Positions 44,987 through 63,881 of a DNA stretch of 64,000 bases are shown here, in pieces. Source of the stretch: Epithemia pelagica (taxonomy: Eukaryota > Protista > Bacillariophyta); contig OX337230.1 of NCBI GenBank assembly GCA_946965045.2, positions 1,116,001 to 1,180,000 on the forward strand, in the 5' to 3' direction. Within the stretch, counting starts at the first letter, position 1. Every line of letters starts with the position of its first letter. The notes under the pieces were generated by a model. The model had not been told where the DNA came from. It saw only the letters and a program-made list of their open reading frames with translations, and made no database searches. A program made the position numbers and the translations under genes.

Positions 44987-45964
44987 ATGTTGTGTCGTGG
45001 CCGTTTCGGAGTTACTCCAACATGGTCTCGTTGGTTGGTTGCATGTGTCGCTGTCCTGTCGTTGGGAAACCTTCCTCAGATGACCATGGCGACAAAATTT
45101 CAATTCGTGAACATGACTTGTACAGGCAATTTGGACCCGGGCGATGATTTCTATGCAACCTGTGAGGCAGCCGATGGAACTCTCGGAGCATGTGATGGAG
45201 GCGATCAATTGAAGGTAGAAGGCTCAATCTCTGTCAACGCTTCCTTGCCCACAGCCTACAATGTAACATGGAAAATCTGCTTGTTCTCCTTGCCGAGCCT
45301 GGGTTCAGTTATATGCGTGTACAGCGACACCCTACCGGGTGAATTATGCGATTTGGCCTCATTGACCGACAGGTACGTACGAAGAAAAATAGCATACGGA
45401 AAAAGTGATTCACGTTACGGCATCTTCCTCACATAGATCATGCACATGAAAATTGATGTATTCAGTACTGGCGGTGAAGCAACATGTGGAGATGAGGGAG
45501 ATTTTGATGTGTCGGTCGATGAAACACTGCCACCGTTCGATCTATCTTTTGGACACGGTATGTAGTTCCGGTGAAAAGCTGAATTATTCTCGCCTTACTC
45601 ATTCGTCTTGTCTCACGCCTCACACCGCGTAGGGTATAAATTGCATGTGGAAGCAACTCTGGAGGACTTGTCAAAAGACGAAAACTCAGCGGATCGTGAG
45701 TTTGCAAAATGCGACGTAACTATAATGACCACTTCCAGTAGTGATGATACGTCCCAGACCACGGCATCAATGGTCTTGACGTGGTCGGCTGTCTTTGGTG
45801 CCGCAGTGGTTGCCTTGGCCTGGCGACGAAGACGTGTGGTTGCGGTCAGGGAAGCGTCGTCGTCGTCTTCATCCCCTTCTGGATCGGCCCCTACCACGGC
45901 ATTTGTGGAAATGACCGATCAAGAAGCACGAGAGATGAGTGGTCGTGGTACTGGAGTTGTGTAG
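44987..45964 (+). CDS. Type I membrane protein with ML-like ectodomain (array member A); exons 44987-45372, 45466-45557, 45633-45964
   Basis: Signal peptide, Cys pattern ...GELCD / TCGDEGDF...TLP / KCDV, TM followed by RRRR, tail AFVEMTD...GVV. Phase-2 and phase-1 GT-AG introns restore frame. Confidence 0.8.
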
Positions 45965-46552
45965 GAGGTTTTGTATTGTTTCGTTTTCGTCCAAACTGTG
46001 TGTCTATGTGGATTCATGGGTGAAATGAAAAGATCTTGAACTCTCAACAAAATGAATCAAGGACAAACAACGGAAAAACATTCAATTGAGTTAATAGTAC
46101 AGATAGTCTTTTTGTTGTAAGTATATGGCATTCAGTTCTGATCATGAAAGACGTTGTAGTTTTCCGTGGTCCATCTGTTGCGGTACTGGAGTACGAATTT
46201 ACCAATCCTGGCTCATAGGAGTAACGGATTGCAGGCAACGCTCACTTTGTCAGATTCCACCGCACGCAACGAAGATTGGGAATTGGGAGAGCCCACGCGA
46301 CCATCGGGTCTTGAAGGGAACGTGTGATACATGGTTTCATTAGTTCTAAGTTAACCTTTTTGCTCATGTGGTACAACCGCGATCTAACTAGTCTACATGC
46401 ATGCAGCTCTGAACTGTTCCTTCAGCACTCATGACTCCGACAACACTTTCATCGGGTGCGATCAAACCCTTGGTTTGTTGGAACCGACCAATGGCACGTG
46501 GACGCGCATGGCTAACATGATTTCACTCCTTTTTCGATAAAAACAAAACACA

Positions 46553-47459
46553 TTACACAACTGTGCCTTGTTGGGCGGTAACATCCACAATTTTGGGCCG
46601 ATCAGTGAGTTCGACAAAGGCCGTCGTATTGTTGTTGTTGGTGGGCGTTAACGGTTCAAGAACCGCCTTAGAGGATGCTGCCGTAGCGAGACGGCGACGA
46701 CGTCTGCGTTGCAAAGATACGACAATCACAGCCACGGCACCCAGGGCAGCGGACCAGGTCATGACAATCGACGCGCCGTTACCGCCGCTGCTGTTGTTGG
46801 CATGAAGCGTTGCTTTACAAGTTTCGAACGTAGATCCACTACTGTCGCTCATCGATGCACTGGCATGAATATTGTAATCTAAAAAAGACCATAACGAGCG
46901 ACAAGGACAAAGTGTCAAATGAGTGCATGACAAACCCAAACACTACACATGATCAAGACAGACCAACGTACTAGACCCCATATTGGCAGGAAGGTCAGGC
47001 AATTTCTGGTCAATGTCCAAGTTAAAGGTACCAACTGAACCGCAATTATTACCAAAACTGTGGGTTTATCAAAACATTAACATGGTAGCGTGTCAGTGAT
47101 GAGAGAGAGTGGATTTGTGTCTTCAAGACAGAACCCAATCGAACTTACCCCACTTTATCGCACACATCAAAATCATCGAATTCTTTCGTGTAGGGGCAAC
47201 CCCAAAGGACTCCCATGGTATCAAATTTGCACACTTTGACCTCCAAATCGTATGTGCTGGGGAAAGCATTGTTGACAGTAACTGTGCCCGTCACCTGGAG
47301 GTTAGCGCCGCTGTCGCAGGCGCCACCGTCGCAGGAACCCGTCACACCCGACAGAGTAACCTTCCCCTTCGAACAACTGATGGATTTGACGGTCCACGTT
47401 GTAGCACGGCAAGAGACAAAGAGTCCTGACAACAGGAGGAAGACTCGAGCGATATACAT
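46553..47459 (-). CDS. ML-like type I membrane protein (member B); exons 47459-47149, 47057-46972, 46878-46553
   Basis: Signal peptide, DVCDK / NCGSVGTF...KLP / TCKA, TM plus RRRRR, tail AFVELTDR...TVV. Same intron phases. Confidence 0.82.
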
Positions 47460-48661
47460 GATGAATCGTCCGTGAGATTGGATGATCAAAGCGCAGTTGC
47501 AGAGAAGGAATGGAACTATGCTTGTTCTTCTTGATACCAAACAACAAGAATGGTTTGCCTGCTTGTACTTTCTTTGTATCAAGCAAAAGAACAACCTGTC
47601 GTCGAAGGACACGTCAAATAAGCTTACAATACACACAATCAACTGCACGAACGAGGAGACTTCCTCTCCTCGCTATTTTGGTCTTTGTTGTCGCAAACAA
47701 TTACGGGTTCTGTACACTACAATACGAATAAGAAGCCGTCTTGATTCGTAGTGTACCGATCCAACCGACAACTTGAACATTCGATCATCCGTTGAGACAA
47801 AAATTACTATGGCGCACCTCGCGTGCATCGGGAGCAGCTCGCCGGGCGAATCAGAGTGCGCAATAATTTTAGTAGCGACCCGCACAAATTTCTCCATCAA
47901 GATCTTGAAAACCGGCAACCTAAGAGAGACTCCATGAGCAAAAAAAGGGCATGGTCTATATCATGGTGCACATATCCATCCTCTGCCACGGGATGTCAAT
48001 TTTATCCCGTTTCCAAACCGAAGTCCTTCTGAGAAGCGCAACAACCAGGCTGAATCCAAATAATGGTGTGTGTCCAACAATCACACACTACCGTATAACC
48101 GTTCTTGGCTGCTGCAACTTGAACAGTCAGTACATTTTCGCTGCATTCCTATCTCTTGAAAGATTCCTGTCAGCCACGTACTCGGGGCAAGGATCTGTGG
48201 CCGTCTAACCGGGTTTTTGGTAGGTACGGCTCTAGTTAGGAGTATTGTAAGAAGGAAAGCTGGTCGAAAACAAGAGAGAAATAGTGTTGATAGATGATAG
48301 TAGTGAGTGGGGCAAGTGTCGACTCGCTCAGAGGCAACAGTTTCGCCACTGCGGGTAGGAGTAGGAGTACTCCTTGAGAATAGGCGAGTAGATGCACTCC
48401 TAGAGTAGTAGGTTTGTGATACAGCAAGGTAGGAGTAGGTTAGCTAGCAAAGAACACACCAACCGATACTCCATGGCGTTTGTAATAGTTGAATTTTAAA
48501 ATTTTGTAGGGATTGAAATTCCTTCAGAGAAGTTGGGGAGTAGACATTCATGTTTCACAATCCTTGATCCTTCTAATATCAAGAAAGCGGCCTACTAGGT
48601 AGGAGGACACCAGATCACAAGAGAGCAGCAAGCTCTTGTACCTTCGCTTGAAAACGTCGTC

Positions 48662-51601
48662 ATGAGTCAAAAGAGCAACCCACCGACCACTGGCACAAAG
48701 TCCAGCTGGTTGTTTTCGTCGTCGTCGTCCACTCCATCGACGACCACGCAGTCGTCATCATCGTGGTTTGTTCCACCCTCGTTTGAATCGGCCAAGGCCA
48801 CCTTTCAACAAGCCTTGGAAAGTACAGGAGATGCCTTGGAGAAAACGGGTGATGCCTTGACACAGGCCGCCCTGAATCCGTCCAGTCGACAAACACAACA
48901 ACAAAAACAACAACAACGACCACCATCCATGCAACCACAGCAAGCGTCGCATACCGCCAAATCCTCACAACCATTGCAAAACCAACAACAACAATCATCA
49001 TCATCCTCTTCCTGGTCGTCACGATGGATGGAATCGACCAAGGCTGGTTTGAAACAAGCCCAATCGGTATTGGAAGAACATCAAGCCAAATTGCATCATC
49101 ATTGGGTGGAATCCCAAAAACAACCGCAAGTAACGCCGCGTGATCCCTCCTTGCCACTCGATGTGGCAGCCTTGCACGAAACCAAATTGGTGTACATTAC
49201 CACACGCATTTTAACCTGTCGACATCCGGCCATGGATTCCAACACGAGCGATGCAGATACAGGTCGTGGCGGTAGTCGTGCGAGTCCAGGCATGTCGGGC
49301 GGCCGCAAATTGGCCGCCGTGGCACAATTGTTGGAACAACGCCATGGTTTGGATCATGTTCGCGTGTGGAATTTGAGTGAAGTGGATTACGATGCGACAT
49401 TGCTTCACAATCAAGTCGTGACCTATTCCTTTCCTGGTTCCCCCAGTCCTCCCTTGGGAATGTTGTTGAAATTATTAATGAGTTTGCAGGAATGGTTGGA
49501 TGCGCATCCACGCAATGTGGCCGTCGTTCATTGTTTGACGGGACAAGGTCGGACCTGTACGGTCGTGACGGCCTTTTTAACCTGGATGGGCCAAGCCGGA
49601 TTGGGTGTCTCGTGGCAAGATACGCTCCAATATGTCGCCGAATGTCAATCGGTACCCGTCCAAGAATTGACCATTCCCAGTCAACGACGCTATCTGTCCT
49701 ATTTTCAAAACATGCTTGATCAAGTCCGACCCAGTCAACCACCCCTGTGGTTGCAACGCATTATTCTCAACCAAGCACCCAAATTTGCGCAAGGGCCACC
49801 ACCATCGCCGACTGCTTCTTCGGCTACGACTACTGCAGCTTCCACCAGTCCAGAGGAGGCCACCAAACCAACAGGTACTAGTCAGAAGGAAACGGAAGTG
49901 TCTGAGCGCCCCTGGGGATGCTCACCCTATATTCAACTATTCAAGGAAGGAAAATTAGTTTTTACCGCACCCGCATCACTCTCCTATCCCACACAACAAG
50001 AACAATCCTCCTCGGAACCATCCAAACAACCATCAGCCGAAGGAGCAACGGACCCTACCACCAACAAGGACGCTCCCACGAATGGTCCTGTCGAATCTGC
50101 CAAGGACACGACTACTACTACTGCGGATGATGATGGCACCACCAAGCCAGCCAAAGCCTCATCGTCCACCGTTCTTCCCTTTTGTACCACCAACGGCGGC
50201 GCGGTCCAATTTCATGTTCATCAAATTGTCCAGGGCGACGTTTTGATTCGATGTCGTCACGTGACACCGCGTAAGAATGCCAAACCGGTTCGTACTTCCA
50301 TGTTTCGAGCCGCCTTTCACACAGGATACATTGGGGGCAATGTGTTGCGATTGACCAAATCGCAATTGGATGGAGCCTGCAATGATGACGATCGATTCCC
50401 CAATGACTTTTATGTGGATTTTATTTTTGAACCCATGGATTCGGAAGAAGCCGCCAAATTGTTTGCCCAACAACAAGCACGACAACAGGCCGAAGAAGAA
50501 GCGGCTCAATTTGAACAAGCACAACAACAACAGGGACCGTCCCCACCAAAAGGAGGAGGATCCGCAACACCCTCCACGGTGGTCACGGCCAGTGCCTACG
50601 ATACCATGTTGGACCGAGATTCGAAATTTTGGGAAGTGATTGCCAATCGCAAACAAGAACAGGCGAAACGGGAACAAGAAGCCAAGGACCCACAAAATGA
50701 TAAGGATAACAAGGAGCAAACACCAGCGGACAGTAAAAAAGACAAGGATGGTACGACGGGTGATGATTCCAAAACTAGTAACAATCCATCTCAAGACGAT
50801 CCATTTTGGGGACCGACCGTAGGTCGACGCCGGCCATTGAAACAAGCCGAATCTTCCTCGTCGTCATCTACAGGGGCTACCGCTTCTGCTGCGGCACAAT
50901 CGACATCGGCGGGTGGTGTTGCCACTGCGGTGGAATCGAGCAAAGCCGCTGCCTCCGCCTTGGCTGCCATGGCCTTTTCGATTGGTGGGGACATGGACTT
51001 TGTACCGCCCTCTCCTCCTAGCAACAAGACTTCGATCAAACCGAAAAAGAAAGCAACCGATTCGCTATTGGCGGCCTTGACGGGGGCCTTGGATGAAGAC
51101 GACAAGGACGAGGAAGAAGAACACGAGGTTGTATTCATGCCCGAAAGTGACGATGATAGAAGCGCTGCTGGAACCTCCGCGACCACAGGAGCAGCGAGTG
51201 CGACGGCCTCGGTGAGCTCCCATACCTCAACAGGAACAGAACCAGTGGCAACGACCACTCCCACCGAAGTTTCTTCGGACCAAAACACGAGTGCACCTAG
51301 TAGTGGCAGTAGTAGCACCGTTCCTGTCAGCAATACAACTGCGACAACGCCGGTGCCACCGCAAAGCAACGAAACAGGGACCACAACAACGGCCGTCACA
51401 TCCAATACGAACGCCGTGGCGGTAGAAGGGCAGGATGAGGGTGATATTAATGTGGACGATGTAGATCAACTGCTTTCCCAGGTCGGAGCTGTAACCGGGA
51501 TTGATATGGATGATATCCATATCGACTTGGATGGTGTTGATGACGACGACGATGATTTGGACGATTTGGAAAACTTGCTGTCGTCTACCAGAAAGACGTA
51601 G
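48662..51601 (+). CDS. PTEN/tensin-like phosphatase plus C2 domain protein, 979 aa, with a long acidic Ser/Thr-rich tail
   Basis: LVYITTRIL, VWNLSE, intact CX5R loop (VHCLTGQGRT), IPSQRRY, and C2 motifs GDVLIRCRH, MFRAAFHTG, LTKSQLDGA, RFPNDFYVDFIF. Confidence 0.92.
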   Translation: MSQKSNPPTTGTKSSWLFSSSSSTPSTTTQSSSSWFVPPSFESAKATFQQALESTGDALEKTGDALTQAALNPSSRQTQQQKQQQRPPSMQPQQASHTAKSSQPLQNQQQQSSSSSSWSSRWMESTKAGLKQAQSVLEEHQAKLHHHWVESQKQPQVTPRDPSLPLDVAALHETKLVYITTRILTCRHPAMDSNTSDADTGRGGSRASPGMSGGRKLAAVAQLLEQRHGLDHVRVWNLSEVDYDATLLHNQVVTYSFPGSPSPPLGMLLKLLMSLQEWLDAHPRNVAVVHCLTGQGRTCTVVTAFLTWMGQAGLGVSWQDTLQYVAECQSVPVQELTIPSQRRYLSYFQNMLDQVRPSQPPLWLQRIILNQAPKFAQGPPPSPTASSATTTAASTSPEEATKPTGTSQKETEVSERPWGCSPYIQLFKEGKLVFTAPASLSYPTQQEQSSSEPSKQPSAEGATDPTTNKDAPTNGPVESAKDTTTTTADDDGTTKPAKASSSTVLPFCTTNGGAVQFHVHQIVQGDVLIRCRHVTPRKNAKPVRTSMFRAAFHTGYIGGNVLRLTKSQLDGACNDDDRFPNDFYVDFIFEPMDSEEAAKLFAQQQARQQAEEEAAQFEQAQQQQGPSPPKGGGSATPSTVVTASAYDTMLDRDSKFWEVIANRKQEQAKREQEAKDPQNDKDNKEQTPADSKKDKDGTTGDDSKTSNNPSQDDPFWGPTVGRRRPLKQAESSSSSSTGATASAAAQSTSAGGVATAVESSKAAASALAAMAFSIGGDMDFVPPSPPSNKTSIKPKKKATDSLLAALTGALDEDDKDEEEEHEVVFMPESDDDRSAAGTSATTGAASATASVSSHTSTGTEPVATTTPTEVSSDQNTSAPSSGSSSTVPVSNTTATTPVPPQSNETGTTTTAVTSNTNAVAVEGQDEGDINVDDVDQLLSQVGAVTGIDMDDIHIDLDGVDDDDDDLDDLENLLSSTRKT

Positions 51602-51848
51602 ACTCATAGCTCGCGTATAACTACTCCTACGTACGGGGCATGGTTTTCCTTTGGGGTTCCGCTTTATTCATAGATTCATGTACACTAATGATAAGACACA
51701 CTGACATCACTATGGGCACAGTCTCTTTTAGGACTGTACAGTCTTCTTTTCGATGTCGAGAGAGGGGTTCAGTGTTGACGCAATGACTCCCTTTTCCGTT
51801 TTTGCGCAACGAGCTAGAGGAAGTGGAGATGGCGAGACTTGCTAGGTA

Positions 51849-52453
51849 AGGGCTGGGTAAGCCGATCCATGTTCGGCTAGGTAGGCTCAGTACAAAACCT
51901 ACGTAGAGTACACAAAATCTCATAGTTGACGTCACGCCGGAAATGGTCGGAATTTCAAAAAAATGCAAAAACGCTCGACAATGATGGCGAGATCCGGTGA
52001 CGCCGTATGCATTCACCCATGCATCGCATAAACATCCAACCACCGTAAGTCCTTTGCCTTAACCTTTGAAATTGTTGTCTAAAATTACAGAAGATTTGCC
52101 AAGTTGGCTGAAAAGGTACGCTCATTTTTCTGCAGTGATGAAATCGAACGACCGCCCTAACTCACTCATTTTTCAATGCTGACTCGACCGAATTGAAAGC
52201 ATAGTCACTCTAGTAGTAAATAATCTTCTTGTCAAAGCGGTCGAGGCAAGCTCTATTATTGAGGAAGTTATGGCCATGGGGGTGATGGCTTCCACCATTG
52301 TCGAGCGATGGCTTCCAATTTGCATTGTTTCTCGTGGCAATAAGTTTTCAATTTGAGACCATCCGCCCCACTTCTTACACAGACGAAAATAGTACTACGT
52401 AGGTTAATGTGCTGAGCCTACTTAGCCGAACATGGATCGGCTTACCCAGCCCT
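51849..52453. mobile_element. MITE, copy 2 (605 bp), inverted relative to copy 1
   Basis: Same TIRs and TA flanks. The interior aligns with the reverse complement of 35391-35984 with many substitutions. Confidence 0.92.
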
Positions 52454-52954
52454 TAGGTGGGTAGGTCTAGGTTGTCTCAATTCTTTGTCCGGCCTATCGT
52501 TTCGGTCGCATTAATCGCCGCCATAGTGTACTCGTATATCAATCTTATGACCACTGACTTCTGCCGGAAGAATCCGACACTCCATGTTGCAATAAGCAAT
52601 AGGCGAGAACCCAGTTTGTTGTCTGTCGGAGTTCCATACTTCTGGTTCTCTGCTCTGGTTTCTGCACTTCCTATCGCACGCGGATTGATATAGGGAATCG
52701 ACAACAATGATGTAATTGAGAAGCGGTATCGACTCCAGATCGCTAGGTTGCTCCTATGCCGAGCAAAACTACCGGAACACCAAATGTTTGGTTTCTGGGG
52801 CAGTCTTATTTTGTAGGAGTATTTCGTCATCTGTGGTTGTGGTGTCCATCAACAATCAACAATCTACTCGTAAGACACGAGGAAGGAGCAACGATATCCA
52901 CAAAATCATTTTTGAAATCCACTCATTCATCTACAAAGATACTCCTACGAGACA

Positions 52955-54184
52955 ATGGATATGATGAACTCTCATGACGCAGAACCAGCAGACTATTCAG
53001 CCTACCGAGCTGCATTGGCATTGAACAATCTCTCAGTGACAATGATGCATCGCGGTTGCTTTGGTCCTGCCGTGAGCACGCTATGTGATTGTTTGACTAC
53101 AATGCAGCTTGCCTTTGTGCCCAAAGCCTATCGAAAAGCACGGCATCACAATAGCACTGTCGGGACGAATACTAGTGCCATTCTTCGTGCACGTCTCAAC
53201 CAAATTGTGGTGAATGCGTCTCGACGCTATCGCCGCACCATGAAACTACTATCGAAACGGGACGGCAATAGTCTTCAGGATACTGCAGCCTCTTTCCCAG
53301 AAGTGGTTCCATTGGACAATGATGACATTTCCGGACTTTTGTCAGTCGCTCAATACGGTCCATCCTTTAGCATGGTATCACCGATTCGGATAGTGGGAGT
53401 TTGTGACAACGCTGAAGGTGACCAGGAAACTGATGAGATCATCAAGCACTTTGGTATAATGTTGTATAATCATGGATTGGCCAGTTTCCTCGTGGCCACA
53501 ACGACAAACAAGCGATCCAGGAACCAACCGAGCCTCAAGCACAAAAAGACACAAAACAAGTATCTTCAGAGATCTCATAAATCCTTGGAAATGGCGGAAC
53601 GAACACTACTCCAAGTGTTTGCTCAAGGACATGAAAGCTATATGAATGGCCAGGGTCGTCACTGCCGTCGTCCCACAAGCCATTCTCCTCCATGCTCCAT
53701 CACGGAGGACAGTTCCGTACGGCTCCTTTTGGCCATTACATTAAATTCGCTGAGCACCACCTTATCCATGAGCGATGAATCGAACAGCGTTTCCAGGAAT
53801 GTGAAACCCAACGAACCACAAGAGACGCAACGATGTACTACTACTACTACCTTGTCGTCGTCCTTGTGCTTGCAGGCCAAGGAACGAGCATCGGCTTTTA
53901 CACGAAATGTGATGCCGCCATCCCGGCTGCATAGCCATACAATTACAATAGCGCGACTGCGTGCTGATGCATGTGCCTGCTCGCACAACGGACAAATTAT
54001 GGCAGCCAGAAGAAGACTTAAGGGAATCTATAGTATATCCTTAGTTATCTACTTAGTGTACCTTTCTCCTGTGCACGTGCGTGTCTCGTGTTTCGAACTC
54101 GGAAGCACAGGGAATTGGCGACATATCTTCTTCGCCCATTCACTTTCAGTTTCCGAAGTCCCCAAGATGCCTGGCGATGACTGA
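52955..54184 (+). CDS. Uncharacterised helical (TPR-like) protein
   Basis: ALALNNLSVTMMHRG, IMLYNHGLA and LAITLNSLS resemble TPR-type helices. The C-terminal part of the ORF looks degenerate. Confidence 0.5.
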   Translation: MDMMNSHDAEPADYSAYRAALALNNLSVTMMHRGCFGPAVSTLCDCLTTMQLAFVPKAYRKARHHNSTVGTNTSAILRARLNQIVVNASRRYRRTMKLLSKRDGNSLQDTAASFPEVVPLDNDDISGLLSVAQYGPSFSMVSPIRIVGVCDNAEGDQETDEIIKHFGIMLYNHGLASFLVATTTNKRSRNQPSLKHKKTQNKYLQRSHKSLEMAERTLLQVFAQGHESYMNGQGRHCRRPTSHSPPCSITEDSSVRLLLAITLNSLSTTLSMSDESNSVSRNVKPNEPQETQRCTTTTTLSSSLCLQAKERASAFTRNVMPPSRLHSHTITIARLRADACACSHNGQIMAARRRLKGIYSISLVIYLVYLSPVHVRVSCFELGSTGNWRHIFFAHSLSVSEVPKMPGDD

Positions 54185-54359
54185 CTGAACGGTCTGTCTT
54201 GTCTTTGTTGCATTACAGGTAGCCTTTGCATCATTGTCAACACGCTTGTTGTTGTAAGTCTGAGCGTGTGACCCGTAATTTCTATTCCGGGGCAACGCAC
54301 TCTTTTCTTTTCATCAAACTAGAACGAGCAACCCAGGCAGGAGGAAAGCAACAAGGACG

Positions 54360-55999
54360 ATGAACAGTATTCCGTCTCAGCATAACCATCAACAAACTTG
54401 TCGAGTAACGTCTCTCCATCAGTTATCCAATGCATTCTTGGTCGTATTGCTGGTGTCTACGTTGCCATTCTTATGCGAAGCCACAATCACTACTTATTCG
54501 TATGCTGGATTGAGCTGTCGTGAGAAACATTGGACCGTCTCCAATGTAATAATTCAATGTTACTCTTCTTCTCCAAATCCCAACTTTTCCTACGTGAAAC
54601 ATTACAGCAGCAACAACGACAAGGTCACTTGTAAACCAGGCGATACCATGTCCATTACGGGCGATTTGTACATCAAAAAGTCTACTCCAGCCACGTACTC
54701 TGTGGAAATTGATGTCTGCACTCACCGTTCCGCGTCATGGTGGAATAAATGGCTCTTGTGTTTCTCCCAAGAAATCTTCCCAAGTAGCGATCCCGATGCA
54801 TCCAATCAAGCCTATGGTAAGAACTACGTTTCGAACAATAATAACGAGGCACAAGAAATGCAAGATGAGAACGTCAATGACGTCCAAGGAGAAGAAGCAG
54901 GAGACCAGACACAACAATGGAACCAACAACAACAACAAGAAACTACCTCTACAGAGACTGTAAGCGAGTCGCCAAAGTATCTAAATGTTTGTCAGAACGC
55001 TACACTCCAATCCACGCAAAAACAAAGTAGCAGCAGCAGCAACAAGTAAGTATCAGACAGAACGGGGACGCCTGAGAGCGCCAAACGTCAGAAATGGGTG
55101 TACCTATAAGACGGAAGGGAGCTCGTCCCACAACCACTGCTATGACAAAGATCAGGCTATACTCACTATCATTGCTCTCATTGGGTTCGTTCTTCTGTTG
55201 CATATTTTGTTGTAAATAGAGCTTGTGGTGGTACTGGAACATATACGTTTTCCATTGCGGAGACATTACCTGGAAGCGACTGGCATATGGGAAGATCAAG
55301 TAAGTGCAACAAGAACTAGCACATGCCTGTCTGTGAGCTTGTTTCGGTTTTTGTCTGATGATTATTTCAACACCCAATTTCCATATTTTGGTATCTGGAA
55401 CTTCTTTTTGTTGCTTTCGTCATGTCGATGATTCTCCACTGTAAACGTCAGTGCAATTTTACTGGGAACACGAATATTCGGTGTTTATTGACGCCATCCT
55501 TACAGATAAAACTCATTCTTCTGCCAGGACCTACGAGCGCTGCACTTTGGAACTTCATGCATCGACATCCTCCTCATCGTCGTCGACATCGTCGTCGACA
55601 TCGTCGTCGACATCGTCGTCTTCGTTATCGTCTTCGGCTTCCTCAATCGTGGTGACGTGGTCGATGGTCGGTGGAGTGGCCTTTGTGGCATTGCTCATTG
55701 CCAATGTGTCTCTCCTGTTTGGTAATGTATCATCATCTTCTCAATCGTCGTCAGCTGGAACAGCAAGACCTCGTCGAAGAATAGTACGCCAGCGTCCTCC
55801 TCCTGAACCAATTCCCGACGAAGACGAGACATCGTCTGCCTTTCCCTGGTCCAGTCCATCCCCGTTACAAAACCATGGATCCAACCGCCGTGCGGTTTTC
55901 ATGGCAGCCGTCTACCGCAGCAAACCAGCATCGGCACCTGCAACAGCACCCACAGGCACGTCCTTTGTCGAACTTACGGATCGGGGAATGGCAGTCTAA
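54360..55999 (+). CDS. ML-like type I membrane protein (member C); exons 54360-55045, 55220-55299, 55452-55999
   Basis: Signal peptide, TCKPGD, NVCQ / ACGGTGTY...TLP / RCTL, TM, tail SFVELTDRGMAV. Same intron phases. Gln/Asn/Glu-rich insert in exon 1. Confidence 0.8.
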
Positions 56000-56802
56000 C
56001 ATATAGCCCACAGACTGTCAAGAACCCGCAACCACCTATATGAAGAATTGAAGATTTGCTTCAAACGAACGGCCTGTAGGTTATGTTCCCATAAAAATGT
56101 GAATCCTCACTGTCAAGGAGAGTCTACGAAAATCATGCGTTCAAGAATGAAGAAGAAAGCAGGGGAATCATTCACTTTCATGCTTCTCCAAGAGGACAGA
56201 AAGGTAAAGAACAACAAGCGGAGAAGATATCGGTTTTAGAGCAACTCAAAGCAAAATATCGTCATCTACAGAATCCGCCTCGAAAGAGGCTTTGAATGCA
56301 ATTAGTTATGTGTAGGAGTAAATGTATCTTTGTACAACTACTTACTACTCCTAGGTAGTTTCTCCTCGCTTGCCTTTTTAGCAGTAGTCGTATATTCCTC
56401 TAGCTAGCTGCAAATCCTAGAGCTCTATATTCCAATTCTCCGACTGCGACTGGAATCACGAAGATTCGTATTCTTGAGTAATTACACTTAACCCACGTGT
56501 CTCAATCGGGTCAGCGAGCTTTTTCAGCAATAGATACGAAACACACGCTTGTCGGTGCGCCGTATGTCCCATTTCCCACATACCCTCACATATTGTAAAA
56601 GGGCGTTGGAATCCTTGATCTGTAAATACGCCTCTCTAGAGACGTTCTTCGCCACGATACAGACTTCAACGGAAACTCCAACAGACGCAAAGTTCTGTTG
56701 AGTACTGTCGCTACAAACTGGACAAGCAAAAGCGTTTCGTTGACTTCATTCGGCGTATCCTCATATCGATATTATCTTCCTTCAATCCGTCAAACCCAAG
56801 CA

Positions 56803-58285
56803 ATGCCATCAAGCGTCTCCTGCACTATCCATGCCGCATTGGTATTCTTAGCTCTCTGGTTGACATGGCCATCTTGTCATGCGACCACGTTTTACTATCA
56901 TAAAATGACTTGTTATCATGGCAAATATGAATTTGCGCTGCAAAAGGCTGAATTGTGCAGTACAACTTTACAACAACATGAAGAACAACAACAACAACAA
57001 TCGTCGTGGTTCCAATCTAAGTGGGAACAACTTACCCAAGTCACTAGTCAGGACCAAGAAAGCAGTGATGGTGGTGATAGTAGCAGTGGTAATGGTGTCT
57101 TGTCTTGGTTTCAAACACAATGGTCCAACGTGAAAGAAAACTTTCAGCAACAAGAACAACAGCAACAACAGCAAATGGGAGACTCGTGGGAAGATGGAGA
57201 ACAAGATACTGAACAGCAAGCCTCTGAAAATCAACAGCAATCGCAACTAACACAAGTTTGTTCCAATGATGGAGACATTTTTGCCTTGGGGGGGATCTTG
57301 ACCTCATCTCAAGTACTTTTCCCCCACTTCTATGAAGTGAAAGCTCGACTTTGTCACTATCATTTCAATGGTACAAGCTTGGGTTGTAAATTTGAAAAAA
57401 CCATTGAAAGCGGCGAATTGAGCTCCTTCACGCGTTATGGAGAAGTCTGTGGTCAGATTTTTGCCCAACACAAGTACGTAAATCATTCGCGCTTGGTGTT
57501 GTTACATGTTCATCGTCATGTGGATTGCTCCCGTTCTCATTTTTATTTCCATTTTTTCTCCCTCTTCCCTCGATATCGTAATGATCGAGTAGCAGCTATT
57601 TCGTTTGTCCCAGCGCTGGAGTCTACCCCTTCTATTACGAACAATACCTGGATAGTGACAGTGTCTCACATCTAACAAACACCGGTAAGCCATCACAGTT
57701 ATTGTGTCTATTGGCCGACAAAAAGCGGGCGGCTATCCTTCTATTTTTCCGGCTTGTTTCTCAAATATGGTTTTATGTTTTTTCCCTGTCGCTTCTGTCG
57801 TCACTGATATTAAAGTGTTTGAGTTCTTCCATTTAAACTATACGGTATATCTTGAACTTTTGGTCACCGACATAAGCAACAACACCGTGTATGAACAATG
57901 TGATCTAGAATTCACGGCCCAGCCCGAGTCCACCACAAGCTTTGCCGACGAGCAAGCCTCACAAGAGTATACCATGGCCATGGCGGCAGCTGCATTCCTA
58001 ATTGTGGCCTTGGTTCGACGAAGTAGGCACTGTCGCAGCGACCGACCGCGACACTTGCAAGCCAAGCGCCCCGAGGGGGAACAAGACGAGCAATTGGACG
58101 TATCCTCTACACGGGAATCGAATAGCATCGATCACTGGGACAGTTACACCAACAGTTTGGACCATGATGAATCGTACTCGACGAGTCCAACCCTGCATTC
58201 GTCTCAGACTCACAATGGGTTTGTGGAACTGACGGATCGGGTTACAACCGACCGAAGAATGAGGGGATCACAGCACGTCGTCTAA
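56803..58285 (+). CDS. ML-like type I membrane protein (member D); exons 56803-57473, 57596-57684, 57816-58285
   Basis: Signal peptide, VCSNDGD / VCPSAGVYPF / QCDL, TM plus RR, tail GFVELTDR...HVV. Same intron phases. Gln-rich insert in exon 1. Confidence 0.78.
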
Positions 58286-58987
58286 GCCCTTGATCGAGGA
58301 AGGGACTTCTCGTCATTCCAAAGAACGACCGACATTCCACATTAGTGGGCAAAGTACATACGTCTGCATTCCAGTTACACATTGACACATAATACGTTTT
58401 TAGTTTTTAGTCCCAACCGGTTAAGTCATCAACAGTTTGATTGTTTCATCTTGAAATTCATTCCTTTCGCTCCAGTTTACTTCTAGCCAGTGTCAAAAAC
58501 TGTTCTTCTCAACTTGATCCAGACAGCTTGTACGCAGTCGCTTTGCGACTGAGACGACTGTCCTGGTGCGACTGACCTTTTCCCTTTCCACCACGGCAGA
58601 CGGCCGGCGTAACAAGCCGCCGCGCGATCGGCAAAGTTTTTTCTCTCGTTCAAAATGTGTGATTCTTCTCGAAGGCACAACAAGGGAGATGAGTATGAGT
58701 CCGCTTCGGGCAGAAAGAGGGAGACTTTGTCCATGTGTTTGGTATGGTCCGTCCCTCCACGAAAGAGACGTTGAGTGGTTGTTCGATTCGGACGAATCCA
58801 CGCCCTCCCAACACGGGCGTTGGGTTTGTGTTGGATGAATTTTTGCACGATACATGCCGCCGACAACATATGTGTTCGTCGCGATGTCCACGATGGTTCG
58901 TTGCCGTGTCGACCACAAATCGCCACAAATTGGTACCATCACCACATCTGAACGTGAACGTGTCGGTCCGACCACTCGAGTACCACG

Positions 58988-59929
58988 ATGACAATGACTC
59001 TGTTCCATCTACACCATGCACGACAATTGTTTTTCGTGGCGATCTTGTTCTGTGGATCGGTTTGCCATGTCACTGGTACCAGCTCGTCGTCGTCCACCTC
59101 CTTTGAGTATATGACGAGTTATTGCATGAAGAATCATTGGACCCTTTCCAATGTGGACGTTGAGTGCCATTCGGATGGCCAAGACGACGAGACTGCGTCT
59201 TTCCCCGGTGATACGCTGCATGTTACGGCAAATGTGGCAGTGCACGCGGCGTTGCCATCGTCCTATTCAATCCAATTGCAAATGTGCAAACAAAATTGGA
59301 TTTTTGCCAGCAGTTGGTCGTGCATGGCCATCACTCAGCAGGCTTTGGAGGATGTGGATTTTTGTGACGAGGAATACCTTGTAGCCACAAACGAGTACGT
59401 TGTGGAGAAAAAAGGCTTCTCTTTGTATTGTTCATATTTTGTTTCTCACCATCATCATGTTTGCTTGCCATGGTTTTCGATTCCTCCCGCTGTGTAGCTC
59501 TACCACATGTGGAACTCGTGGGAACTATACGTTGGACATGGAAGTGCCCTTTCCGGGAGAAGCCAATTTCACGAACGGCAATGGTACGTTCGATGGTCGT
59601 TGGAACAATGAGACTCGTCTACCTCGATTCTGATGCGTTTGCGTTCGTTGCGGAATATAGGCAGCCCTCTCTACCTACAAGCAATTCTCCTGTATACAGG
59701 AACCGGGACGGGAGTTTACGAAAAGTGTTTGATGGAATTTGCCGCCCAACATTCTCAGAGTGTGGCGTATGCCTGGGTCGGCATGGTCGCACTGCTCGTG
59801 GTGGGGGCCGCAGCCTGGCGCAAACGCAAACGACATGTCCTCTTACAACTGGACAATGTCGACTTGCAGGAAGCCCTCGCTGCTGTAGAGGCCGACCAAG
59901 GGCATGCGACGGAGCTACCCGTGGTGTAG
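58988..59929 (+). CDS. ML-like type I membrane protein (member E); exons 58988-59394, 59498-59583, 59661-59929
   Basis: Signal peptide, PGD, DFCD / TCGTRGNY / KCLM, TM plus RKRKR, ends ELPVV. Same intron phases. Confidence 0.8.
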
Positions 59930-60076
59930 GGTTCGTCGATGGTCGGGACCAGTTTCCCGAAACTCGTCCTCCTATACTGCATCGATGAGAGAAGGACACG
60001 ATAGTAGAAACGGCACGAGATGAAAACTATAGAAAAACGCAGATGGTGGCTCGAACCAGGGACGTTTGAATCCTAG

Positions 60077-60190
60077 GATATCGTTTTGTCTTGTAGTGTG
60101 GTTATTCCGACCTACGAAAGCACCTTGGTTCGTTCGATATCGTTTTGTCTTTGAGTGTGGTTATTCCGACCTACGAAAGCACCTTGGTTC
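60077..60190. repeat. 59-bp-period tandem duplication
   Basis: GATATCGTTTTGTCTT...GTGTGGTTATTCCGACCTACGAAAGCACCTTGGTTC at 60077 and 60136. Confidence 0.9.
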
Positions 60191-60890
60191 TTTGCGAACG
60201 GGGGGTTCATCCATATTGTAAAGATGCCATTTGCATGAACGAACAGTCGGTAGGCGTAATCGTTGGGTGTAAATCCCGTACGCTTTCACGGGCCCAATGT
60301 GATCAATGCAGATGTAGAGGATATAAAGTCGACCTAGGTAGGTAGACAATAGACGTCAACCACTCACCAAGGACCATCACAACCGACGATGGGGGATTCG
60401 GGGAGAGTTCTCTCTCCAACTTCCAATTCCAACGGCTTCCTTCTATAACAGGAAGTTATGCTGGCGCGACAGCGATATATGTATATGTGATATGTGTTAT
60501 GCGTTGCGCATGCGCCCTGATGTGGCAATTGTACATCTAAGGATACCTAGGAGACTCGCACGCTCCTTTCTTTCACCAGATTCTTCTCAACGGTCCATTG
60601 TGAGTTGTGAATCTTGGTGGTGGATAGACATTACACTATTGTACTCGTATTACAGATATTTGCACAATTTAAGCAGCAAACATGCGCTGAGTAATGGCAA
60701 TCCGTTGGGAGGATCATGTCCGCGCACGTCGGAGTCTTCATCGGCCAGCAGCGCTCACAATTTTTACGTGGATCCAACGACTGAACGAGCTGAATTTTGT
60801 CCCCTTCTCTCGCTCTCCCTCGTCAATCCTCTCTCTCGGTGTCGATTCAGCACTCTCAGCCCATTCTTAGCCACGACAACGATTACAGCC

Positions 60891-61944
60891 ATGCGTCCGA
60901 CCTCCTCTTCTCCTTCTACTAATCAAGGGTGTTTCACCGTACGGATGGTGACCGTTCTGGCAACGTTGTTGTCCATGGCGTCCTCGGTTCAAGCAAACAA
61001 CGTGGTGTATTCGTTTGCAAACCAAGCGAGTGCTAAACGGAACTCGATCACCAATGCCGTGGTGACCTGCAAATTCTCAAACTCCGAAACCTCTACCTAT
61101 ACGCAAAATTGTGTCGAAGGACAAGAACTCACTATTACGGCAGATATGTATTGGTACAATACCTTACCCGCTCCAACCACTGGCAGTGACGGTTCCACAA
61201 CCTACAAAATGCAAATGAAAATGTGCGAGTATGGCGGCAACCAATGCAATACAATCGAATTTGATGACGATCTTTGTGCTGGGGGTTATGAAGTGACGCT
61301 CACCCCTGCCGTGTACGTTGATCAAATGCGTGTTTTCAAATACTCGTGAACATATCTCACTGTTTTATTTCTTGCTTAACTTGTAATCCAGGTCCGGAAC
61401 ATGCGGAGCAGCAGGTTATTATTATCTGTCCATCGCAACAACTTTTGTGAACTCGGCGAACACTTGGGTTGACTACAGTAAGTACGAAACCCAGTATCTT
61501 CGGCTTCACTGCTTCGTGCTACGTACCTGAGTGCACGAACAACGTTGTCCTTCGTCTTTTTGGTGGACGTTGCTCTCCGATTGCTGACTTGGTCTTTTCT
61601 CCCCATTTGATGATTTGTTAGACGCTCGCATGAACTTGGATTTTATTATTTTGGCCGAAACTTGCCCGTCCTCGGGTGCGGAATGTACACAGTACACGGT
61701 TGAAGAATTGGACTTTCCCTTCACCACTGTCACCTGGGACGGGAATACTTCTTACCAAAGCACCGCCACGAGTTACGCCGGTTCCTTTGCCGCCGCCCTC
61801 GTTTTGGCATTGGCCGGTGGCGGTGCCGTCATTCGACGACGACGTCTTCTCCAGCAAGAGCAGCAAGATGAACCCGCTGAGGAGACTACTTCCAGTACCT
61901 TTGTCGAACTTGCCGACCGACCTGATCATTCCGCTGTTGTGTAA
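60891..61944 (+). CDS. ML-like type I membrane protein (member F); exons 60891-61312, 61392-61477, 61622-61944
   Basis: Signal peptide, CVEGQ, DDLCA / TCGAAGYY / ECTQ, TM plus RRRR, tail TFVELADR...AVV. Same intron phases. Confidence 0.8.
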
Positions 61945-62716
61945 CCAAGACTTGACAGCATACAAGTTTCTCCAACTATACTGCCCCTTCGTCGCCTCAC
62001 CTCTCAAGCCATTCACACTCCGTGTTATTCCACTCGTCACAATATCCTATTTTTAGTCTGTTGATGGAGGCTTCATCTGTAAAAATGTCCATTAACTAAA
62101 TTAAGAAATGTCCTCCTATATTCTAGACATGAGATATAACTACTCCTACCATCCCATCGCCAATAGTTGAAGGGCTAGAACAAGGGCAATTTCCGCTGTC
62201 AAAGTTGCTCATGACGGAGATCATGAACCGCTGCGTGGTTCGCAAAGGCATCAACACCACCAGTGATGCACAATCCTCATTCTTCATCATCGACATCGAC
62301 TGAGAGAGTCTTGGGGTAAGAACCGCGACCGCGACCGTTCAACCGACAGTTTGGGGGATCAGCGGATGGATCAACGGACGGAATATCTCATGGATTTAGA
62401 ACTTTTAGACATGAACGAATCTCAATGCAACCGTTGGAAGTACTTCGATGCCATGTTAGACATCCGTTCAACGCTTCCTTTGGCGGAATCATGTCCTCCT
62501 CATTTGGAGACGAACGCCGTAAGTATATCAATCTGCTTGGCACAACCCAAAGCACGACTGCGATTTGTCCAAAGAAGCACTGTGTATAGATACTGTTGAT
62601 CCGTCGTTGGAAGAATCCGGGAACAAATAATCACATCAACACCTCCAAGCGAAGCTCAAATACTGGAACAAATCTCATCAACATTACCAAAATCATCAGG
62701 ACCGAACTGACTGACG

Positions 62717-63881
62717 ATGAGAACCTTGGTCGGATTCCCACAATGCTTGTTATGTTTGCTTCTTCTGTCCCCGATGGTCCTTGTTCGGGCCCGCACATCC
62801 TTTGCTTACGTGGGCATGCAATGCAAAAGGAATCGTTGGTCCATGAAAGGAGAAACGGTCATTTGCAATCACCAAGATTCCTTGACCTGTTCAGCAGGCG
62901 ACGAAGTTACTATGGTCGGTGATTTGAAAATTCATACGAGTTTGCCCCAAGAATACCAAACAATTATCAAAGAATGCAAATATCACTTTGGTCCCTTCTC
63001 CTTTGCCTGTCCATACGATCAAAAGTTTGATGATTTGGATCTCTGTGAACGCGGAAATCTCAAGCCCCAAACGTACGTTATTGCAGATGTCGTTCTCTGT
63101 TCCAGTTTAGACAAACCATCATCAACCGAGTGCTGACACCATGAACTTGTTTTCTTTCTTGATTGGAATACTCGTTGCTCATGGATCGATTGGCTCATCA
63201 TCATGCAGTGATGATATATATTGTGGCAAAGCAGGAAGCTATTCCTTGTTCATTCAAGAGGAGCTGCCTGGATTTCGATTGGTGCTAGGTTTTGGTATGT
63301 TTGTCATGACTGTGTCCTTTTGAACTGCTTCTTGGTTCTTTCCATTCTGACAATACACTCCTTCAATGGATCATTCGCCTTTGTTCTAATGACATTTTCT
63401 CCGTCTTGAAGGCTACGCCATGTACTTGGAAGGATCGATTATTGATACGACCGATCCGAACAATCCCTTTGAGTATGAGCATTGTACGATGGAATTTCAT
63501 GCTGTACGACCCTCCTTTCTCTCGTCGTCAACGTACTCGAAATTGTTTGGTTCCGCAAATTCCGCCTACAGCTATGATGGAGTGGCGGCTGCGGTTGGTG
63601 TGTCGGCGCTCATCTTGATTTATTATCGTACATGCCGACGTGGTCAACAACGAACCGCCGCTGTGGAAGAAGAGGCCGTTCCAACCTTTCCCGAGGATGG
63701 ATCGTCCTACAAGATGAATCATCCTCTTCCAATTCATCCTCAAAATGCTCACAATACCAACAACAATCACAACCCATTGTCGCCGTCGTGTTCGTTTGTC
63801 GAAATGACCGACCGGCAGTCTCACAGTGTACACACGGCAATGGCAGGCACCTCCTTCATGGGTTCCTCGTCGGTGGTGTAG
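62717..63881 (+). CDS. ML-like type I membrane protein (member G); exons 62717-63072, 63209-63294, 63412-63881
   Basis: Signal peptide, TCSAGD, DLDLCE / YCGKAGSY...ELP / HCTM, TM, tail SFVEMTDR...SVV. Same intron phases. Confidence 0.82.

What the first reader, a model, noticed from the sequence alone, without database searches (positions are those of the whole stretch)
44987..63881. Array of seven hyper-diverged, membrane-anchored ML-like receptors with identical gene architecture
Seen: seven genes, each with a signal peptide, a Cys-patterned ectodomain (C..C..GD...G.....LP..Y....C...C...[D/E]LC | C[GP]..G.[YF].....LP | ...C), one TM helix, a basic stop-transfer and a short tail. All have a phase-2 then a phase-1 intron around an 80-92-nt exon carrying C[GP]xxGx[YF], although the ectodomains share little else. 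Known: this Cys/Gly pattern is typical of ML domains (MD-2, NPC2, GM2 activator), which bind lipids including LPS and sterols and are usually soluble. Inference: an old, diversified cluster of lipid-sensing surface or endosomal receptors, a candidate pattern-recognition or lipid-uptake system. The ORF track misses it because of the introns.
Basis: partly seen in the sequence, partly recalled or inferred. Interest (0 to 1): 0.8.

Follow-up and report, generated by a model that had tools for sequence, protein, structure and literature searches.

The report
Membrane-anchored ML-like protein gene array
Seven neighbouring, very divergent diatom genes each encode a single-pass membrane protein whose outer domain is predicted to fold like the lipid-binding proteins NPC2, MD-2 and GM2 activator, an unannotated family whose ligand and role are untested.

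Summary
Seven intact three-exon genes lie at 44987-63881. All have a phase-2 then a phase-1 GT-AG intron around an 80-95-nt middle exon. Each encodes a signal peptide, an eight-cysteine ectodomain, one TM helix, a basic cluster and a tail ending in FVE[LM][TA]D[RQ]...[VA]V. Paralogues are 19-33% identical.

No exon or full-length relative matches any Pfam family, including PF02221. A profile search of 1.84 billion proteins found full-length relatives only in Epithemia clementina (hypothetical proteins), plus unnamed environmental diatom contigs. The two E. clementina genes mapped have the same exon layout, and the E. clementina copies are loosely clustered too.

AlphaFold models of two E. clementina members (26% identical to each other) give confident eight-strand sandwiches. 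In four fold searches the best matches are NPC2, GM2 activator, MD-1 and MD-2 (Foldseek E 2e-6 and 3e-5; Z up to 7.5). The ML-like fold is therefore supported at moderate strength. Lipid binding and receptor function remain inferred.

The window's own spliced proteins could not be folded because they have no reference. I rate it a new variant of a known kind, of moderate interest.

The parts
44987..45964 (+). Gene 1, 269 aa. Exons 44987-45372, 45466-45557 (92 nt) and 45633-45964. Mini-exon motif at 45485-45532; tail motif FVEMTDQ at 45902-45922; ends in VV.
   Evidence: Sequence read; splice enumeration; alignments; motif scan.
46553..47459 (-). Gene 2, 240 aa, tail-to-tail with gene 1. Exons 47459-47149, 47057-46972 (86 nt) and 46878-46553. 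Mini-exon motif at 46997-47044; FVELTDR at 46598-46618; ends in VV.
   Evidence: Exon 1 is 35% and exon 3 36% identical to E. clementina P0015, the highest exon-1 value among the window genes; the tree does not resolve its placement.
54360..55999 (+). Gene 3, 437 aa. Exons 54360-55045, 55220-55299 (80 nt) and 55452-55999. It has an acidic, Q-rich insert before Cys6 and a long poly-Ser stalk. Mini-exon motif at 55224-55271; FVELTDR at 55964-55984; ends in AV.
56803..58285 (+). Gene 4, about 410 aa. Exons 56803-57473, 57590/57593/57596-57684 and 57816-58285. A Q-rich insert of about 100 aa lies between Cys2 and Cys3. Mini-exon motif (CPxxGxY) at 57606-57653; FVELTDR at 58220-58240; ends in VV.
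   Evidence: It shares the insert (SSWFxxKW) and groups with E. clementina P0025 and P0027.
58988..59929 (+). Gene 5, 253 aa. Exons 58988-59394, 59498-59583 (86 nt) and 59661-59929. Cys3 is replaced by Ser, and the tail motif is degenerate (AVEADQ at 59882-59899). Ends in VV.
   Evidence: It groups with E. clementina P0039 and P0020 (support 96/98 for the trio). tblastn identity to the P0039 gene is 41-51%.
60891..61944 (+). Gene 6, 276 aa and the most divergent. Exons 60891-61312, 61392-61477 (86 nt) and 61622-61944. Cys1 is absent and there is an extra Cys seven residues before Cys8. FVELADR at 61900-61920; ends in VV.
62717..63881 (+). Gene 7, 303 aa. Exons 62717-63072, 63209-63294 (86 nt) and 63412-63881. 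Mini-exon motif at 63222-63269; FVEMTDR at 63795-63815; ends in VV. The window ends 119 nt later, so the array may continue.
   Evidence: It pairs with E. clementina P0024 (support 93/94).
48662..54184 (+). Two unrelated genes sit inside the array and are not part of the family. One is a PTEN-like phosphatase with a C2 domain, in an ORF at 48662-51601. The other is a 409-aa ORF at 52955-54184 with no family match.
   Evidence: Pfam PTEN_C2 at E 3.5e-20, and no significant hit for the second ORF.

Best explanation
This is a tandem array of seven intact paralogues of an unannotated diatom gene family. Named relatives were found only in Epithemia clementina; the other relatives are on unnamed environmental diatom contigs. 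Each gene encodes a type I single-pass membrane protein. From N- to C-terminus it has a cleavable signal peptide, an eight-cysteine beta-sandwich of about 150-170 aa predicted to have the ML (NPC2 / MD-2 / MD-1 / GM2-activator) beta-cup fold, an S/T-rich stalk, one TM helix, a polybasic stop-transfer and a variable cytosolic tail. The tail ends in a conserved FVE[LM][TA]D[RQ] box and a C-terminal [VA]V.

SHOWN: the gene structures, the homology among paralogues, the conserved intron phases, orthologues with the same layout in another genome, and the predicted ML-like fold for two family members.

INFERRED: the exposed (extracellular or lumenal) ML-like cup holds a hydrophobic ligand such as a sterol, glycolipid or other lipid. 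The strongly diverged ectodomains would then give different specificities. The shared tail box and terminal valine would serve a step common to all paralogues, either ER export and sorting or docking of one cytosolic partner. That would make these proteins membrane-tethered lipid binders or sensors, unlike the soluble carriers of the classical ML family.
For: Gene models: all seven are phase 2 then phase 1 with strong donors; gene 1 read by eye. Family conservation: showing 8 conserved Cys, GD..G, LP..Y, CGxxGxY, YExC, the tail box and the terminal V. Topology: with an N-terminal hydrophobic segment in all seven genes and a second, TM-like segment followed by R/K clusters (in gene 4 it is short and was read from the alignment). 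Relatives: HMMER against 1.84e9 proteins; names of the E. clementina hypothetical proteins. Same 3-exon layout, phases and middle-exon length (89 and 92 nt) in two E. clementina genes. Same motif order in an environmental diatom contig. Paralogues predate the species split. Fold: model of P0015 with ectodomain pLDDT 74-94; Foldseek top 21 hits all NPC2, GM2A or MD-1, best E 2.1e-6; VIA second look, top 22 all ML family, MD-1 Z 7.5 at rmsd 3.0 over 111 residues; Foldseek-independent search of 48,161 chains, ranks 1-4 MD-1, MD-2, NPC2, MD-2. The second paralogue, P0039, is 26% identical to P0015 and its ectodomain is confident apart from one 20-residue stretch at pLDDT 68-70. Its Foldseek top 16 hits are all NPC2 or GM2A, best E 2.6e-5, and the wide search ranks MD-1, GM2A, NPC2, NPC2 first. 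The ESM Atlas shape search returns PF02221 and fungal 'ML-like' TRP_N clusters. A C-terminal valine acts as an ER-export determinant in other type I proteins (proTGF-alpha V160G, PMC4907727).
Against: No sequence-level link to ML. There is no PF02221 or PF14558 hit at E<=1 for any exon or for six full-length relatives, and no PDB hit by profile. Fold Z-scores never reach 8, which the tool notes is a range also reached by unrelated common beta-sandwiches; TM-scores are 0.45-0.58. The folded proteins are E. clementina relatives, 20-51% identical to the window genes, not the window's own products. No coordinates were available, so neither a cavity nor the disulfide pairing could be inspected. The central hairpin of the profile also matches bacterial Ig-like repeat proteins of the DUF11 / He_PIG type, so part of the signal is generic to Ig-like sandwiches. 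No ligand, localisation or partner is known.
Confidence: 0.6

Rival explanations
1. The ectodomain is a generic disulfide-stabilised Ig-like (E-set) sandwich used for protein or carbohydrate recognition. Examples would be cell-cell or gamete recognition, or substrate or mucilage adhesion in a raphid diatom. On this reading it has no lipid pocket, and the ML resemblance is only that of a common arrangement.
For: Best Z is 7.4-7.5, within the range the tool reports for models without true relatives. Just below the ML rows come Wzt carbohydrate-binding domains, GH2 Ig-like domains, archaellins and ASF1. The family profile's central hairpin hits bacterial DUF11 / He_PIG / TIGR01451 surface repeats. 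Mucin-like S/T stalks and fast-diverging ectodomains with a conserved tail are typical of adhesion and recognition receptors. An embedding search of exon 1 gave Sushi-like neighbours, though weakly.
Against: ML proteins occupy the top ranks in all four searches of two different paralogues with two aligners, and Foldseek probability is 1.00. The C[GP]xxGx[YF]x5LP strand, and the Cys in the first and last strands, resemble ML hallmarks; that comparison is from my own memory of NPC2 and Der p 2 and was not tool-tested. The bacterial hits cover only about 40 profile columns each and reach significance only by summing 5-20 repeats.
Confidence: 0.27
2. They are silica-deposition-vesicle or frustule-associated membrane proteins organised like the silicalemma-associated proteins (SAPs) or Sin1. 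Those have a signal peptide, a lumenal domain with a Ser-rich region, one TM helix and a conserved cytosolic segment that links to cytoplasmic machinery.
For: The overall order (signal peptide, Ser-rich stretch before the TM, single TM, conserved cytosolic element) parallels the SAP description in PMC5647440. Gene 3 has a poly-Ser run of about 30 residues just before the TM.
Against: In SAPs the conserved segment is 28 aa and sits immediately after the TM. Here the juxtamembrane region is variable and the conserved box lies at the extreme C-terminus. No RXL site follows the signal peptides. The SAP paper mentions no Cys-patterned domain ('cysteine' occurs 0 times). SAPs are predominantly found in centric diatoms, whereas named relatives here are in the raphid pennate Epithemia. 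No SAP sequence was available for a direct comparison.
Confidence: 0.06
3. The models are decaying or unexpressed gene copies (pseudogenes), or artefacts of forcing splice sites.
For: There is no transcript evidence for the window genes. Gene 5 has lost one conserved Cys and has a degenerate tail box, and gene 6 has lost Cys1.
Against: All seven reading frames are open across three exons with canonical strong donors. Conserved Cys, Gly and Pro positions are kept at 19-33% identity, which requires long purifying selection. Two E. clementina genes that were mapped have the same exon layout, in an annotation that used RNA-seq and protein evidence (PMC12377750).
Confidence: 0.04

Closest known systems
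ML (MD-2-related lipid-recognition) domain proteins: NPC2, MD-2, MD-1, GM2 activator, Der p 2 / Der f 2 (Pfam PF02221)
   Same: The domain size is about 130-170 aa and the predicted fold is an eight-strand beta-sandwich or cup. These are the best structural matches for two family members. The proteins are secretory-pathway proteins with conserved disulfides. A C[GP]xxGx[YF]...LP strand and Cys residues in the first and last strands recall ML hallmarks; that last comparison is from memory and was not tool-tested.
   Different: No PF02221 HMM match. There are eight rather than six conserved Cys. Classical ML proteins are small soluble lumenal or secreted carriers, whereas these are tethered by a TM helix and carry a conserved cytosolic tail box. 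Ligand binding is untested.
Fungal Flc/TRP-like proteins with an N-terminal 'ML-like' domain (PF14558 TRP_N + PF06011 TRP)
   Same: An ML-like domain follows a signal peptide and is held on a membrane by the same polypeptide. In the Atlas shape search this cluster aligned over model residues 20-242, a range that includes the helix after the domain (row 4).
   Different: The fungal proteins are multi-pass channel-like proteins of about 700 aa, whereas these are single-pass proteins of 240-440 aa. There is no PF14558 hit. The tail motif is unrelated.
Silicalemma-associated proteins (SAPs) of diatoms (PMC5647440)
   Same: Diatom-specific type I membrane proteins with low overall similarity, recognised by motif order: signal peptide, Ser-rich region, TM and a conserved cytosolic element.
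   Different: The position and length of the conserved cytosolic element differ, and no Cys-patterned ML-like domain is described for SAPs. Sequences were not compared.
Bacterial DUF11 / TIGR01451 / He_PIG Ig-like repeat surface proteins (T9SS cargo of Flavobacterium and others)
   Same: They share a hairpin motif of about 40 residues (GD.hxhxG...LP) that the family profile picks up repeatedly. In two of these proteins PF02221 also gives weak hits, in one case at the same place.
   Different: The match covers only part of the domain. The bacterial proteins lack the Cys pattern and are giant multi-repeat proteins, and the diatom proteins do not match PF01345. This is probably generic sandwich similarity.

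Membership tests
ML domain (Pfam PF02221, E1_DerP2_DerF2) | Significant match to the family HMM | tested here: not met
   No PF02221 hit at E<=1 for the exon-1 and exon-3 pieces of all seven window genes or for six full-length E. clementina relatives. The short middle exons were not scanned on their own. Family profiles find no ML chain in the PDB at E<=10.
ML domain (Pfam PF02221, E1_DerP2_DerF2) | Beta-cup / Ig-like sandwich fold superimposable on NPC2, MD-2 or GM2A | tested here: met
   Tested on two E. clementina family members, not on the window's own spliced products. ML proteins fill the top ranks in Foldseek (E 2.1e-6 and 2.6e-5) and in VIA-align (Z 7.5 and 7.4, rmsd 3.0-3.5 over 111-122 residues). 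Strength is moderate, with no Z of 8 or more.
ML domain (Pfam PF02221, E1_DerP2_DerF2) | Conserved disulfides, including one tying the first strand to the last, and the CPxxGxxYxY..LP strand | tested here: inconclusive
   C[GP]xxGx[YF]x5[LF][PVD] is present in all seven genes. A first-strand Cys and a last-strand YExC are present in six of seven. Gene 6 lacks the first Cys and has gained a new Cys next to the last one, which fits that pairing. Actual pairings could not be read because no coordinates were available. The ML reference pattern is from memory.
ML domain (Pfam PF02221, E1_DerP2_DerF2) | Internal hydrophobic cavity that binds a lipid | not testable with these tools
Silicalemma-associated proteins (SAP) | Conserved 28-aa cytoplasmic domain directly after the TM, a Ser-rich lumenal region and RXL sites | tested here: not met
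   Compared with the published description, the juxtamembrane region here is variable and the conserved box is C-terminal. Ser-rich runs occur in only some members. No direct sequence comparison was possible.
DUF11 / TIGR01451 conserved repeat domain | Match to PF01345 across the domain | tested here: not met
   The diatom proteins have no PF01345 hit. Only about 40 profile columns resemble the bacterial repeats.
p24/TMED cargo receptors (type I, lumenal GOLD sandwich, C-terminal di-hydrophobic signal) | GOLD domain and a short (about 12 aa) tail | tested here: not met
   There is no GOLD hit in Pfam or among the fold matches, and the tails are about 40-110 aa. Only the terminal VV is reminiscent, and that is from memory.

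The most novel reading that the evidence does not exclude
These proteins are a diversified, single-chain pattern-recognition repertoire: MD-2/NPC2-type lipid cups wired directly to a TM helix and a common cytosolic docking motif. Diatoms of the Epithemia lineage, which house a Gram-negative cyanobacterial nitrogen-fixing endosymbiont, would use them to sense or shuttle bacterial or endosymbiont lipids (lipid A-like, hopanoid, glycolipid) at the cell surface or at the membrane around the endosymbiont. Named relatives were found only in E. clementina.
Probability: 0.08. Interest if true: 0.9.

Novelty: new variant of a known kind. Interest (0 to 1): 0.55.

Why it matters
ML-fold proteins are the soluble lipid handlers behind LPS sensing (MD-2), lysosomal sterol export (NPC2) and ganglioside breakdown (GM2A). 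A family in which that fold is tethered by its own TM helix would be a new architecture for it. The other features that set this family apart are the conserved cytosolic motif, the multiplication into an ancient tandem array and the fast-evolving ectodomains.

It would also give diatom biology candidate receptors for lipid signals such as sterol sulfates, oxylipins and bacterial lipids. Very few surface receptors are known in diatoms. The family has no Pfam model or functional annotation, and prokaryote-style ORF calling splits each gene into separate exon-sized ORFs.

If the family proves restricted to the Epithemia lineage, it becomes a candidate for host-endosymbiont interface functions. 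The conserved FVE[LM]TD[RQ]...V-COOH tail is a testable sorting or docking signal in its own right.

Tried and rejected
1. Pfam scans of all exon-1 and exon-3 pieces and of six full-length relatives found nothing above noise.
2. Word-index protein searches with gene-2 exon 1 and with the exon-3 alignment found only the window's own ORFs. A third search, with a mixed full-length and fragment alignment, added one more E. clementina paralogue and three metagenome fragments, and no named homologue from any other genus.
3. Profile searches against PDB sequences found only chance hits such as MCM8.
4. An embedding search of exon 1 alone gave Sushi-like neighbours at a recognition score below the trust threshold, so I rejected it as a lead. 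With the full-length P0015 it returned only an unnamed diatom cluster of 80 members.
6. A k-mer search for a shared upstream motif, 350 nt before each ATG, found nothing above shuffled controls.
7. Literature searches for ML domains in diatoms and for membrane-anchored ML-like domains found nothing relevant.
8. SAP, p24/TMED and DUF11 memberships were considered and rejected; see Membership tests.
9. The window's spliced proteins have no reference, so they were never sent to any search or fold tool. Joined models were built only inside scripts, for lengths, Cys and hydrophobicity counts, a local tblastn against L001 and a tree. Folding and HHpred-style comparison of the joined window proteins were therefore left out.
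10. A profile-profile comparison with an ML alignment was not possible, because no ML sequences were available from a tool.

Full report
**What is there**

The region has about 47% GC and no long ORFs spanning whole genes, but it has obvious exon-sized ORFs. Reading gene 1 by eye, then enumerating all GT..AG combinations that keep an open frame, gives one best model per gene. There are seven genes, six on the + strand and one (gene 2) on the - strand.

- Each gene has three exons, a phase-2 intron and then a phase-1 intron.
- Donors are GTACGT, GTAAGT or GTATGT, and introns are 75-174 nt.
- The middle exons are 80-95 nt.
- Coordinates are listed under parts.
- Two unrelated genes sit between genes 2 and 3: a PTEN-like phosphatase/C2 ORF at 48662-51601 and an unassigned 409-aa ORF at 52955-54184.
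- The family motifs occur nowhere else in the 64-kb window.
- Gene 7 ends 119 nt before the window's end, so the array may continue.

**Protein anatomy**

Exon-by-exon alignments, all made by reference, show the following order:
- an N-terminal hydrophobic signal sequence;
- a mature domain with eight conserved Cys and the landmarks TxFxY..C, C..GD.L..G, LP..Y....C, D.C, CGxxGxY.....LP (the whole of exon 2) and YExC.hEF;
- an S/T-rich stretch;
- a hydrophobic TM segment followed by R/K clusters;
- a variable tail.

The tail ends in a conserved FVE[LM][TA]D[RQ] box 4-21 residues before a C-terminal VV or AV. Paralogues are only 19-33% identical. Gene 5 has lost Cys3 and has a degenerate box. 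Gene 6 has lost Cys1 and gained a Cys next to Cys8, which fits a first-strand to last-strand disulfide.

**Handling of spliced models**

The joined proteins of the window genes have no reference, so they were never sent to a search or fold tool. All searches used exon pieces by reference. Joined models existed only inside scripts, for counts, a local tblastn against L001 and a tree. Folding or HHpred-type searching of the joined window proteins was therefore left out.

**Relatives**

Pfam finds nothing for any exon. Word-index searches found only the window's own ORFs. A profile of the seven mature exon-1 pieces was searched with HMMER against 1.84 billion representatives and gave 34 hits. They fall into three groups.

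1. The window's own ORFs.
2. Full-length proteins of 247-442 aa that contain all three exon parts in one chain and mostly end in FVE[LM][TSA]D...V. All of these are 'hypothetical protein' entries of Epithemia clementina. A later search added one more paralogue.
3. Fragments on unnamed Logan, JGI and ENA contigs, together with giant bacterial Ig-repeat surface proteins (Flavobacterium T9SS cargo, TIGR01451/DUF11 type). The bacterial proteins match only about 40 central profile columns and become significant only by repetition.

Evidence for a shared, old gene structure:
- Two E. clementina genes were mapped back to their contig. They have the same structure, with phases 2 and 1 and middle exons of 89 and 92 nt.
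- An environmental 587-kb diatom contig shows the same motif order.
- The E. clementina annotation used BRAKER2 with RNA-seq and protein evidence (PMC12377750). The spliced form is therefore at least annotation-supported in a relative.
- In E. clementina the genes also lie on one contig, but spread over about 180 kb of a repeat-rich genome. The g4-like and g5-like genes are adjacent and in the same order as here.
- A maximum-likelihood tree pairs gene 7 with P0024 (support 93/94). It groups gene 5 with P0039 and P0020 (96/98), and more weakly gene 4 with P0025 and P0027 (84/42).

The paralogues therefore predate the split of the two species, and 'old, diversified cluster' is supported.

**Fold**

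I predicted two E. clementina members using family alignments that included the window's exon pieces. P0015 is a short member whose closest window gene by exon identity is gene 2, and P0039 is the gene-5 orthologue. The two are 26% identical to each other. Both give confident eight-strand sandwiches for the ectodomain and a helix for the TM. P0015 has ectodomain pLDDT of 74-94. The P0039 ectodomain is confident apart from one 20-residue stretch at pLDDT 68-70.

| Search | P0015 model | P0039 model |
|---|---|---|
| Foldseek against the PDB | Top 21 hits are exclusively yeast, human or bovine NPC2, GM2 activator and MD-1; best E 2.1e-6 | Top 16 hits are all NPC2 or GM2A; best E 2.6e-5 |
| VIA-align second look at Foldseek's hits | First 22 rows are MD-1, MD-2, NPC2, GM2A and Der p 2; Z 7.5-5.9 | not run |
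| Foldseek-independent scan of 48,161 chains | MD-1, MD-2, NPC2, MD-2 rank first | MD-1, GM2A, NPC2, NPC2 rank first |

The Atlas shape search for P0015 returns an unnamed diatom cluster, then PF02221 clusters, then the fungal 'ML-like' TRP_N family.

Four cautions apply. No Z reaches 8, and TM-scores are 0.45-0.58. There is no sequence-level link to PF02221. I could not inspect cavities or disulfides. I put the ML-like fold at roughly 75-80%, and lipid binding at no more than about 45%.

**Mechanism proposed**

Shown:
- type I topology elements;
- an ML-like predicted ectodomain;
- a conserved tail box and a conserved terminal valine across paralogues and species.

Inferred:
- The cup binds a hydrophobic ligand on the extracytosolic side.
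- Ectodomain divergence diversifies the ligands.
- The common tail mediates ER export, sorting or adaptor binding. A C-terminal valine is an ER-export determinant in proTGF-alpha (PMC4907727).

Whether the proteins signal, take up ligands or merely present them is open.

**Rivals**

- A generic Ig-like recognition or adhesion domain, at about 0.27. It is favoured by the middling Z-scores and the DUF11-like hairpin.
- SAP-like silica-vesicle proteins, at about 0.06. The motif order is similar, but the conserved cytosolic element is in the wrong place.
- Silent pseudogenes, at about 0.04.

**Context**

The genome-size estimate (986 windows of 64 kb), the GC content and the high divergence from E. 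clementina fit E. pelagica as described in PMC12377750. I did not establish the species.

**Not done**

- Profile-profile comparison with ML.
- Cavity analysis.
- Selection tests, because divergence is saturated.

**Verdict**

This is a new variant of a known kind, a membrane-tethered ML-like domain with a conserved tail motif in an unannotated diatom family. Interest is 0.55.

Noticed in passing
window 48662-51601 (+): A single-exon 979-aa ORF inside the array encodes a PTEN-like protein. It has a phosphatase region with an intact CX5R loop (HCLTGQGRT), a PTEN C2 domain (PF10409, E 3.5e-20) and long Q/S/T/D-rich flanks.
   Followed up: partly
window 52955-54184 (+): A 409-aa ORF between the PTEN-like gene and gene 3 has no Pfam match above noise. 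Its function is unknown, and I did not check whether it is a real gene.
   Followed up: no
P0005, P0006, P0011, P0013 and similar (bacterial proteins): Giant bacterial T9SS / TIGR01451 Ig-repeat surface proteins match the central GD.hxhxG...LP hairpin of the diatom profile 5-20 times each. In P0005 a weak PF02221 (ML) hit falls at the same residues (826-927 against 880-923). This could be a distant sequence bridge between ML and DUF11-type sandwiches, or just generic similarity.
   Followed up: partly
window 59093-59392 (gene 5) and 60993-61310 / 61622-61700 (gene 6): Gene 5 has Ser in place of conserved Cys3, whereas its E. clementina orthologue keeps the Cys. Gene 6 lacks Cys1 but has an extra Cys seven residues before Cys8. 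This pattern suggests Cys1 normally pairs with Cys8.
   Followed up: partly
L001, L002, L003 (E. clementina contig JBGMNV010000286.1): The family cluster that occupies 19 kb here is spread over about 180 kb in E. clementina, at roughly 138 kb, 243 kb and 307-318 kb of the contig. Near-identical copies also lie on a second contig of 561,611 bp, probably the other haplotype or a recent duplication.
   Followed up: partly
L004 5810-7219 and 13231-15687: In the environmental diatom contig, the family gene is flanked by a DDE_Tnp_1_7 (piggyBac-type) transposase ORF and an RVT_2 (copia-type) reverse transcriptase ORF.
   Followed up: no
window 45780-45830, 46720-46770, 55415-55470: Genes 1-3 and E. 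clementina P0015 share a conserved segment, hVhTWSA, at the start of the TM helix. This suggests a constraint on the outer-leaflet end of the helix in that sub-clade.
   Followed up: no
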